Part shown: positions 35,486 to 37,046 of the stretch, piece after piece
How positions within the stretch are numbered: position 1 is the stretch's first letter
Layout: each line of letters starts with the position of its first letter
Assembly: GCF_041956535.1 (NCBI RefSeq)
Contig: NW_027192196.1
Coordinates: 452,921-516,920 of the forward strand
DNA from: Calcarisporiella thermophila CBS 279.70
Lineage: Eukaryota; Fungi; Calcarisporiellomycota
Reading direction: 5' to 3'
Length of the DNA: 64,000 nt
Translations under genes and position numbers: made by a program
The notes under the pieces: generated by a model
Databases searched by the model: none
Told to the model about the DNA's origin: nothing
What the model saw: the letters and a program-made list of their open reading frames with translations, nothing else

Positions 35486-35869
35486 TTTTTTATTTACTTT
35501 CCATCGTGTGCTATGTAGATTGCCATTACCCCCTCTTTCTTTATCTATTTTCTTTTATTCAAGCGCATACTCGCACTTTCTTTTACCATTAATAATAGAA
35601 AATATCGACAATCAATCCCAATCAATCCATATAATTGAAAAATGTATTGAGAATGCATGTATGCTGCGCCTTGTATTTCAAAGTTGTAAATAGGGGCCGA
35701 AAAGAAAATAATGGTTCATCCTCCCTAAGATTGATTTTTGGATGGTTATGAAGGTAAATTTCAAAAAAAAGTTGAAGTTGTTTCGGTTATGCCTAATAAT
35801 TTTGCGTTTAGATTCCTTTTCAGAACTATTAACTGAAAAACAATCGAGTTATCCGAAAAACGATCCAAA

Positions 35870-36401
35870 ATGCATATTTTTGTTAAATCTCTCGACAGTA
35901 CCTTAGTTCTCAATGTCAACCCCTCAACCCAGGTTGAGGAGGTGAAAAACCTCATCCAGCAACGTGAAGGTACTGTTATGTTCAGTCACTACTTTCACAA
36001 TTTGCTCCTAATTTCATAATTCTTGTTCTATAGGCATTTCGGCCTCTGCCCAACGCCTCACTTTCGCCGGAAAACCTCTCTCTGAGGGCACGCTCGCCGA
36101 CTACGCTCTCGTTCCCGAGAGCACGCTTCACCTTTCTCTTGCATTGCTCGGTGGTGGCAAGAAACGTAAGAAGAAGACGTATACCACCCCAAAGAAAATC
36201 AAGCACAAGCGCAAGAAGGTCAAGCTCGCTGTGTTGAAGTACTACAAAGTCGATGCAAATGGAAAAATCACTCGACTCCGTCGCGAGTGCCCGAACGAAA
36301 CTTGCGGTGCCGGCGTGTTCATGGCATGGCATCCAGACCGCCAGTACTGTGGAAAATGTAGCCTAACCTATGTGTTCAAGAAGGAGGGCGAGGCTAAATA
36401 A
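35870..36401 (+). CDS. RPS31: Ubiquitin-like protein fused to 40S ribosomal protein eS31/S27a
   Basis: Exons 35870-35969 and 36034-36401 encode a 74-aa UBL ending LLGG, then [18 protein letters not shown]...[24 protein letters not shown]. Confidence 0.95.
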
Positions 36402-36567
36402 TCTATCTGACAATTGGAATGTCTGGCGACTTTATGTTCAAAATAAATAAATCACGTATAGGGGCAAACGCATTCACATTCAAAAGATTGAGGAATTTTA
36501 TTTTCAGTAAAAAGTCATAAAAAACCTTCAATCTAACAAAGTGCTACAATACACGCAATGACAAAGT

Positions 36568-37046
36568 CTAACCGGACTTGTCGGCTTTACTTTTTGAGGT
36601 TTCGCACCAAGCAATTACCTGCTTACGATAGAAAGGCCAGGGAGGAAGGATAACCTGAATGGGCGCGGAATGAATGATGAGAATTATGTCAATAGCACCG
36701 AGATTGTAAAGATAATAATTACAATTGCGGAGACAAGCACTCCAGCGCCATAGATGCCGAACATGACGAGTAACGATTGCATGTAGCAGCCAACAATGAA
36801 TGCAGTTACCTAAGGATATGTAGAAATATTTATTCATTAATCGGCACGTATTAACAAAAGCAAACATGCAATGTACCGCGAAAATCGCAATTATAATCTG
36901 GAGAAGATCTTCAGATAATTTTTGTCCCTTGAAGTCCTGATGGCAGAAAGCAAATAAAAAGACAATGTGTTTATGATATAGGGCTAGACGCGCACTACTA
37001 TTGATCTTACAATATTCCATTCGAACCAATCTCTGAGATCTGCCAT
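36568..37046 (-). CDS. SPC1: Signal peptidase complex subunit 1 (SPC12)
   Basis: Spliced MADLRDWFEWNI|DFKGQKLSE, two TM helices, and ILPPWPFYR...W motif. Confidence 0.9.

What the first reader, a model, noticed from the sequence alone, without database searches (positions are those of the whole stretch)
35870..36401. eS31/S27a fused to a divergent, FUBI-like ubiquitin paralog instead of ubiquitin
Seen: splicing gives [74 protein letters not shown] followed by intact eS31. My manual alignment to canonical ubiquitin gives about 42/76 identities, whereas ubiquitin is normally near-invariant. LRLRGG has become LALLGG (R72/R74 lost), the I44/V70 patch is T/S, and K11/K29/K33/K63 are lost while K6/K27/K48 remain. 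Known: eS31 is usually fused to true ubiquitin, while the 74-aa FUBI (ending xLGG) is fused to eS30 and needs particular DUBs. Divergent UBL-S27a fusions are known in some protists, so this may not be unique. Inference: this is a FUBI-like module on eS31, either a dedicated 40S assembly chaperone with its own protease or a distinct modifier not handled by Uba1.
Basis: partly seen in the sequence, partly recalled or inferred. Interest (0 to 1): 0.8.

Follow-up and report, generated by a model that had tools for sequence, protein, structure and literature searches.

The report
Ribosomal protein eS31 with non-ubiquitin leader
In the fungus Calcarisporiella thermophila, and in the Mucor-like and Mortierella-like fungi sampled, ribosomal protein eS31 is made with a leader domain that descends from ubiquitin but is no longer ubiquitin; this is a new fungal example of a pattern already known in nematodes and several protists.

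Summary
Window 35870-36401 is a two-exon gene (64-nt phase-1 intron in the Gly codon at ubiquitin position 35). It encodes a 74-aa ubiquitin-like domain ending LALLGG, followed by an intact eS31. It matches an NCBI model of Calcarisporiella thermophila exactly over exon 2 and exon 1.

The domain shares 41 of 76 positions with this genome's own ubiquitin. R72, R74, K11, K29, K33 and K63 are lost, and I44 and V70 are now polar.

It is not a one-off and not decaying:
- All three eS31 genes of the genome carry it, and no canonical Ub-eS31 exists. PolyUb and both Ub-eL40 genes encode identical true ubiquitin.
- dN/dS between paralogs is 0.07-0.16 for the domain, against about 0.01 for eS31.
- The 43 other sequences aligned, from Mucorales, Umbelopsis and Mortierellomycotina, carry the same kind of domain. 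With the three Calcarisporiella copies they form one clade (support 100/99) with shared fixed changes.
- The codon-35 intron is also found in Glomeromycotina genes with canonical or intermediate ubiquitin. The domain therefore diverged in place from ubiquitin and has no specific link to FUBI.

Most likely it is a cleaved in-cis helper for eS31 that Uba1 cannot charge. Divergent Ub-S27a is known (Caenorhabditis, Apicomplexa, Giardia), so this is a new member of a known kind.

The scan's first stage also noted the two paralogs elsewhere in this genome; neither note had been followed up. No RNA run was listed.

The parts
35870..35969 (+). Exon 1: residues 1-33 of the ubiquitin-like domain plus the first base of the Gly34 codon (ubiquitin position 35)
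   Evidence: PF00240 E 9e-5; identical to the start of NCBI model P0001
35970..36033 (+). Intron, 64 nt, GT..AG, phase 1, splitting the Gly codon that corresponds to ubiquitin Gly35
   Evidence: The same position is split in both paralogs, in Benniella, Rhizophagus and Paraglomus, and reportedly in Plasmodium UbS27a.
36034..36155 (+). Exon 2, first part: residues 34-74 of the ubiquitin-like domain, ending LALLGG. The expected cleavage point is after 36155.
   Evidence: AF2 beta-grasp with pLDDT 87-92; Foldseek match to ubiquitin at TM 0.91
36156..36398 (+). Exon 2, second part: mature eS31, 81 residues. It comprises the Lys-rich N-terminal extension and the zinc-ribbon (PF01599, about 36231-36368).
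   Evidence: PF01599 at 88 bits, E 3.6e-25; junction and extension identical to canonical fungal Ub-eS31 such as P0011
36399..36401 (+). Stop codon TAA
35754..35823 (+). Putative 5'-UTR intron (GTAAAT...TTTTCAG) with conserved flanks. Inference only.
   Evidence: Upstream blocks and both splice-site-like motifs are conserved with the paralog at G000:C6:395 kb although synonymous sites are saturated. No RNA data are available.

Best explanation
This is one of three copies of the Calcarisporiella thermophila Ub-eS31 (RPS27A/UBI3-type) gene. Its N-terminal ubiquitin moiety has evolved in place into a ubiquitin-derived domain that is no longer ubiquitin. The change dates to the common ancestor of Calcarisporiella, Mucoromycotina and Mortierellomycotina.

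Shown:
- The fusion is intact, spliced and under purifying selection.
- It is the only form of eS31 encoded in the genome.
- It is predicted to fold as a ubiquitin-type beta-grasp.
- It has lost the features that ubiquitin needs for Uba1 charging and receptor binding: R72, R74, and the I44 and V70 positions of the hydrophobic patch (L8 and H68 are kept).
- It keeps an invariant L73-L74-G75-G76 tail directly in front of an unchanged eS31 N-terminus.

Inferred:
- The domain is translated with eS31 and acts in cis as a folding and solubility aid and a 40S-assembly aid, as ubiquitin does in yeast and FUBI does for eS30.
- It is cut off after LLGG by a deubiquitinase-type protease that tolerates the altered tail.
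- It is then not conjugated. Cellular ubiquitin comes from polyubiquitin and the two Ub-eL40 genes.
For: Gene and domains.

Only form of eS31: all three eS31 loci carry the domain and none carries ubiquitin. PolyUb, two Ub-eL40 genes and one further fusion encode one identical canonical ubiquitin.

Selection: dN/dS is 0.07-0.16 for the domain and 0.005-0.015 for eS31, with dS above 1.

Clade-wide trait:
- All 43 aligned Mucoromycotina and Mortierellomycotina rows are divergent, at 30-40 of 76 identities to ubiquitin.
- With the three Calcarisporiella rows they form one clade with support 100/99.
- Fixed derived residues are S7, R33 and L74, with S/T44 and N/S70 without exception and L13 in 87% of rows. 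L73, G75 and G76 are invariant in all 46.

In-place origin: the shared phase-1 intron in codon 35 (PMC10457151). Ubiquitin is the best solved match (E 3e-16).

Fold: pLDDT 87-92, and TM 0.91 with rmsd 1.1 A to ubiquitin.

E1 argument: Uba1 strictly requires Arg72, and replacing Arg74 blocks E2-to-E3 transfer (PMC3731359).

Role by analogy: a chaperone role for divergent UbS27a was proposed for Giardia (reported in PMC10457151). Cleavage-dependent 40S maturation was shown for FUBI-eS30 (PMC8354635).
Against: - There is no expression, protein or cleavage data for this organism; no RNA run was listed.
- An invariant GG end is also what a conjugated modifier would keep.
- K6, K27 and K48 are retained in 89-96% of the clade, which mere chaperoning does not obviously require.
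- Fixed derived surface residues (S7, S44, N70, L74) point to a specific partner that is not identified.
- Ala72, found in Calcarisporiella only, is the NEDD8-type gate residue, so charging by the NEDD8 E1 is not excluded.
- Monophyly of fast-evolving sequences can be inflated by long-branch attraction, although the indel and the fixed states argue against that.
Confidence: 0.6

Rival explanations
1. Pure relaxation. Once the eS31-linked ubiquitin escaped homogenisation with the polyubiquitin locus (the Catic and Ploegh model), it drifted. Only the fold and the cleavable GG end are selected. The shared 'derived' residues are historical accidents inherited from one ancestor, with no dedicated partner or new surface.
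For: - Between-subphylum identity of the domain is only about 50%, as far apart as each is from ubiquitin.
- The domain evolves about 10 times faster than eS31.
- The same drift is reported in many unrelated lineages (PMC10457151 and PMC6332867).
- Glomeromycotina show intermediate stages at 61 and 51 of 76 identities.
Against: S7, R33 and L74 are invariant, and positions 44 (S/T) and 70 (N/S) hold only those residues, across all 46 sequences, over what must be hundreds of millions of years. These positions lie on the former I44 patch and tail, which is more than fold maintenance needs. dN/dS of 0.07-0.16 is still strong constraint.
Confidence: 0.2
2. A distinct conjugatable modifier. After release from eS31, the 74-aa domain is activated through its GG end and attached to targets, either by an E1 other than Uba1 or, in Calcarisporiella, by the NEDD8 E1 because residue 72 is Ala.
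For: - GG and L73 are invariant, and K48 is kept in 96% and K27 in 89% of the clade.
- R72A or R72L turns ubiquitin into a NEDD8-E1 substrate (PMC3731359).
- The domain would be produced in ribosome-scale amounts.
Against: - Residue 72 is Glu in Mucoromycotina and Asp in Mortierellomycotina. Acidic residues were not among those selected by the NEDD8 E1.
- The hydrophobic patch is partly polar at positions 44 and 70; that both E1s dock on this patch is my own knowledge, not tested here.
- Replacing R74 blocks E2-to-E3 transfer in the ubiquitin cascade.
- No stand-alone gene for this domain was seen, though that search was nearly uninformative.
- The genome has its own NEDD8 gene.
Confidence: 0.1
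3. The domain is not removed. It stays on eS31 as a permanent extra domain of the 40S beak, as reported for Giardia's Ub-like-eS31.
For: Giardia's fusion is reported uncleaved (PMC8122580). The loss of R72 and R74 could weaken recognition by ordinary deubiquitinases.
Against: - In Giardia the failure is ascribed to an Ala inserted between the glycines. Here LLGG followed by G-K-K-R-K-K-K is intact and invariant.
- Uncleavable Ub-eS31 in yeast and uncleavable FUBI-eS30 in human cells give defective 40S subunits (PMC8354635 citing Lacombe 2009).
Confidence: 0.07

Closest known systems
Divergent ubiquitin moieties of Ub-S27a genes (Caenorhabditis ubl-1, Jones & Candido 1993; Apicomplexa, Giardia and other protists, Catic & Ploegh 2005; Plasmodium, PMC10457151)
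   Same: The eS31/S27a fusion carries a ubiquitin moiety that has diverged strongly, while polyUb and Ub-L40 in the same genome stay canonical. The S27a part stays conserved, the fold is retained, and a codon-35 intron is present in Plasmodium as it is here.
   Different: A fungal lineage, for which I found no description in the held literature. The trait is shared by the three lineages sampled (Calcarisporiella, Mucoromycotina, Mortierellomycotina). It has a set of fixed derived residues and an invariant LLGG tail. At 41 of 76 identities it is less divergent than P. falciparum at 24 of 76.
Canonical Ub-eS31 (yeast UBI3, human RPS27A)
   Same: Same gene by descent. The architecture, the junction (GG then GKKRKKK...), the eS31 sequence and, in relatives, the intron position are all the same.
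   Different: The leader is not ubiquitin, so the gene cannot supply ubiquitin. R72, R74, I44, V70 and four of seven lysines are changed, and two single-residue deletions give 74 aa.
FUBI-eS30 (FAU) of Holozoa
   Same: A 74-aa, fast-evolving, ubiquitin-like leader with an xLGG end on a small-subunit ribosomal protein. For FUBI it is cleaved (by USP36) and needed for 40S maturation, which is the likely functional analogue.
   Different: The partner differs (eS30, not eS31), as do the lineage and the origin. FUBI has a single lysine and 36% identity to ubiquitin. This genome's eS30 genes have no ubiquitin-family match beside them. No FUBI sequence was available by reference for a direct comparison.
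NEDD8/Rub1
   Same: Ala at position 72 (tail LAL-) in the Calcarisporiella copies.
   Different: Over ubiquitin positions 22-50 the domain matches ubiquitin at 16 of 29 and this genome's NEDD8 at 11 of 29. It is fused to eS31. Relatives have Glu or Asp at position 72. Residue 74 is Leu, not Arg.

Membership tests
Ub-eS31 (RPS27A/UBI3) fusion gene family | C-terminal Ribosomal_S27a zinc-ribbon domain | tested here: met
   PF01599 at 88 bits against a cut-off of 22.3, full profile 1-44
Ub-eS31 (RPS27A/UBI3) fusion gene family | N-terminal ubiquitin-fold domain ending GG, directly followed by the Lys-rich eS31 N-terminus | tested here: met
   PF00240 on both exon pieces; beta-grasp model with TM 0.91 to ubiquitin; junction identical to that of canonical fungal proteins
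Ub-eS31 (RPS27A/UBI3) fusion gene family | Orthology with canonical Ub-eS31 genes (shared gene structure and phylogeny) | tested here: met
   Phase-1 intron in codon 35 shared with Rhizophagus and Paraglomus; the proteins nest among fungal Ub-eS31 proteins
Ubiquitin proper | Near-identity to the cell's ubiquitin | tested here: not met
   41 of 76 identical to the ubiquitin encoded by this genome's polyUb and Ub-eL40 genes
Ubiquitin proper | Arg72 (Uba1 gate), Arg74, the L8/I44/V70 patch and seven lysines | tested here: not met
   A72, L74, T44 and S70; only K6, K27 and K48 remain; requirement documented in PMC3731359
FUBI | Fused to eS30 | tested here: not met
   It is fused to eS31. The three eS30 loci do not coincide with any PF00240 match.
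FUBI | 74 aa with a C-terminal diglycine | tested here: met
   74 residues ending LLGG; FUBI features from PMC8354635
FUBI | Single lysine (the K27 equivalent); specific sequence kinship to FUBI rather than to ubiquitin | tested here: not met
   Several lysines are present, including K6, K27 and K48. The best solved relative is ubiquitin. A direct FUBI comparison was not possible because no sequence was available by reference.
NEDD8 | Ala72 with Arg74, closer to NEDD8 than to ubiquitin, and a stand-alone precursor | tested here: not met
   A72 is present, but residue 74 is Leu. Matches are 11 of 29 to own NEDD8 against 16 of 29 to ubiquitin. The domain is fused to eS31.
Divergent UbS27a class (Catic & Ploegh 2005) | S27a-linked ubiquitin moiety divergent from polyUb and UbL40 of the same genome, with S27a conserved | tested here: met
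   class as described in PMC10457151 and PMC6332867
Divergent UbS27a class (Catic & Ploegh 2005) | Processing and lack of conjugation in vivo | not testable with these tools
   Needs proteomics or biochemistry

The most novel reading that the evidence does not exclude
The eS31 leader of Mucoromycota is not just a drifted ubiquitin. It is a new ubiquitin-like protein with its own selected surface (S7, S/T44, N/S70, L73-L74) that fits a dedicated protease or 40S-assembly factor. Alternatively, it is itself conjugated, and in Calcarisporiella the Ala72 tail could let the NEDD8 E1 charge it. That would add a UBL system to a fungal group that includes genetically tractable species.
Probability: 0.12. 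Interest if true: 0.7.

Novelty: new member of a known kind. Interest (0 to 1): 0.4.

Why it matters
Why eukaryotes make eS31 as a ubiquitin fusion is still debated: is it for ubiquitin supply or for ribosome assembly? A large fungal group, including culturable and transformable Mucor, Rhizopus and Phycomyces, has kept the fusion, the fold and the GG junction for a very long time. Over the same period it has given up everything that makes the leader ubiquitin. That argues that the assembly role alone is enough to maintain the fusion. It also offers a natural system in which to find the protease and the surface that matter. For annotation, these proteins should not be labelled as a ubiquitin source; 'ubiquitin-40S ribosomal protein S27a' labels in Mucorales are misleading. 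The general phenomenon is already known elsewhere, so the advance is incremental.

Tried and rejected
- Expression: the look-up of sequencing runs listed no run. Expression is argued only indirectly: these are the only eS31 genes, selection is purifying, and the upstream blocks are conserved.
- Stand-alone copies: the word search with the 74-aa domain alone found no candidate. Even ubiquitin shares too few exact 5-mers with it, so this blank says almost nothing.
- Catic et al. 2007 (PMC1933403) is not held, and Catic & Ploegh 2005 is not held either. Which three non-protist species they listed is unknown to me, so a zygomycete could be among them.
- FUBI kinship could not be scored directly. 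No FUBI sequence was available by reference, and I did not type one from memory.
- Spliced model: searches were done exon by exon by reference, or with the database protein P0001 by its id. A joined model of my own was not searched. A joined string was used only inside one script to index residue positions.
- My first NEDD8 comparison was out of register and was redone.
- The exhaustive representative search, complex prediction and the Atlas search were not run. The claim does not rest on absence of relatives, and I do not claim a specific binding pair.
- Thermophily as a cause is rejected, because mesophilic Mucorales and Mortierella share the trait.
- Replacement by another UBL gene (NEDD8 or FUBI) is rejected on intron position, phylogeny and best matches.

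Full report
**What is there.** Reading window 35500-36800 shows an ATG at 35870. A 5' splice site GT follows at 35970, directly after ...CGT GAA G. A 3' splice site (...TATAG) ends at 36033, and the open frame then runs to TAA at 36399-36401.
- Exon 1 translates to 33 residues and exon 2 in frame to 121 residues. The split codon G|GC gives the Gly between them.
- Pfam finds the ubiquitin family on both pieces and Ribosomal_S27a at 88 bits on exon 2.
- The word-index protein search with exon 2 returned an NCBI model of Calcarisporiella thermophila (P0001, 155 aa) at 100% identity. Its sequence begins with the exon-1 peptide.
I did not search a joined model of my own.

**How far from ubiquitin.**
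- This genome's own ubiquitin is encoded identically by two polyubiquitin loci, two Ub-eL40 genes and one further fusion.
- Against it the leader matches at 41 of 76 positions, with single-residue deletions near positions 10 and 54-55.
- K6, K27, K48, L8, H68, L73, G75 and G76 are kept.
- K11, K29, K33 and K63 are lost. I44 is Thr, V70 is Ser, R72 is Ala and R74 is Leu.

**Not a stray copy.**
- The genome has three eS31 loci, and all three carry the same kind of leader ending LALLGG. None carries ubiquitin. Because eS31 is a universal ribosomal protein, this fusion must be the working form.
- Between the paralogs, synonymous sites are saturated (dS 1.2-2.6).
- dN/dS is 0.07-0.16 for the leader and 0.005-0.015 for eS31. 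That is clear purifying selection, about ten times looser than on eS31.
- The two copies on contig C6 also share conserved upstream blocks around a GTAAAT...TTTTCAG pair. This looks like a 5'-UTR intron.

**Not a species oddity.** Among the 120 best homologues:
- Every named Mucorales and Umbelopsis protein ends ...ELLGG, and every Mortierellomycotina protein ends ...DLLGG.
- These share only 30-40 of 76 positions with ubiquitin.
- Chytrids, Dimargaris, animals and Rhizophagus have true ubiquitin. Acaulospora (61 of 76) and Paraglomus (51 of 76, tail LRLLGG) are intermediate.

In an alignment of 46 divergent leaders:
- S7, R33 and L74 are invariant. Position 44 is always S or T and position 70 always N or S. 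L13 is present in 87%.
- L73, G75 and G76 are invariant.
- Identity between subphyla is only about 50%.

A maximum-likelihood tree of the full proteins puts the 46 on one side of a branch with support 100/99. Glomeromycotina fall separately.

**Origin.** The phase-1 intron inside codon 35 is present in several places:
- all three Calcarisporiella genes;
- Benniella, which has a divergent leader;
- Rhizophagus (canonical ubiquitin) and Paraglomus (intermediate);
- Plasmodium UbS27a genes, as reported in PMC10457151.

The best solved relative by sequence is ubiquitin (E 3e-16). The AlphaFold model of the leader (pLDDT 87-92) superposes on ubiquitin at TM 0.91 and rmsd about 1.1 A. Over the stretch where this genome's NEDD8 exon is available, the leader matches ubiquitin at 16 of 29 and NEDD8 at 11 of 29. 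The leader is thus the ancestral ubiquitin of Ub-eS31, diverged in place once, before Calcarisporiella, Mucoromycotina and Mortierellomycotina separated. It is not a FUBI or NEDD8 relative.

**How it probably works.**
- Phage-display and kinetic work shows that Uba1 strictly requires Arg72.
- R72A or R72L makes ubiquitin a substrate of the NEDD8 E1.
- Replacing Arg74 blocks E2-to-E3 transfer (PMC3731359).
- With A/E/D72, L74 and polar residues at positions 44 and 70 of the hydrophobic patch, the leader should not enter the ubiquitin cascade.
- The invariant LLGG in front of an unchanged GKKRKKK... start of eS31 points to continued endoproteolytic release.
- Yeast and human work, cited in PMC8354635, shows that uncleavable Ub-eS31 or FUBI-eS30 gives faulty 40S subunits.
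- The Giardia exception is ascribed to an Ala inserted between the glycines (PMC8122580), which is absent here.

My best reading (about 0.6) is a cleaved, non-conjugated in-cis helper for eS31, functionally like FUBI for eS30. The fixed derived residues suggest a specific partner, most simply the processing protease. That is inference.

Rivals are pure drift with only fold and GG selected (0.2), a new conjugated modifier (0.1) and a permanent uncleaved domain (0.07).

**What is known.** Divergent ubiquitin in Ub-S27a genes was described in the following:
- Caenorhabditis (Jones & Candido 1993);
- twelve further species, mostly protists (Catic & Ploegh 2005);
- Giardia (Catic et al. 2007);
- Plasmodium (PMC10457151).

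Searches of the held library found nothing on Mucoromycota or Calcarisporiella, and the 2021 review does not mention them. The two Catic papers are not held, so I cannot exclude that a zygomycete was listed there. I therefore file this as a new member, a fungal clade, of a known kind.

**Limits.**
- No RNA run was listed, so splicing and expression rest on sequence logic and on the NCBI model.
- The survey of relatives is the best 120 of 2781 hits. A canonical Ub-eS31 from a Mucorales species would have scored about as well as Rhizophagus (rank 11), and none appeared. That is moderate, not complete, evidence of absence.
- The first stage of this scan also flagged the other two paralogs (s1-600804, s1-588519). 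I confirmed both loci.

Noticed in passing
window 35690-35869; L002 2000-2200 (minus strand): The two C6 paralogs share conserved upstream blocks, although their synonymous sites are saturated. The blocks include GCTGCGCC, TTTTTGGATGGTTATGAAGGTA and TTAGATTCCTTTTCAG..TAACTGAAAAA.AATCGAGTTATCCGA. They look like a promoter or 5'-UTR with a roughly 70-nt 5'-UTR intron. The C4 paralog has a different upstream region and a higher GC3 (0.72 against 0.57-0.59).
   Followed up: partly
G000:C4:872819-873349 (L011, L017, L024): One of the two Ub-eL40 genes has an intron at or next to ubiquitin codon 35, the same place as in the eS31 genes, yet it encodes perfectly canonical ubiquitin. It also has a second intron inside eL40.
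   Followed up: partly
G000:C2:1143554-1143769 (L007, minus strand): A canonical ubiquitin is fused in one open frame to a tail of about 130 aa that ends in a Cys/His-rich segment, possibly an AN1-type zinc finger. It was not scanned against Pfam.
   Followed up: no
P0012 (marine eukaryote catalogue); P0052 and P0065 (Paraglomus); P0023: The tail change recurs elsewhere in eS31-linked ubiquitins. An otherwise near-canonical marine sequence (68 of 76) ends LVLALLGG, exactly the Calcarisporiella tail. Paraglomus and an unnamed JGI protein end LRLLGG. R74L, with or without R72A, may be an early and repeated step when this moiety leaves ubiquitin duty.
   Followed up: no
L005 and L010 (G000:C9 about 326-328 kb; C20 about 188 kb): Long runs of N (withheld or masked sequence) lie inside or next to both polyubiquitin loci, so the number of ubiquitin repeats could not be counted.
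   Followed up: no
P0007 (Blastocystis), P0004-P0008 and others: Several database 'S27a' models carry partial extra ubiquitin or duplicated S27a segments. These look like assembly or gene-model artefacts, or transcript read-through from polyubiquitin.
   Followed up: no
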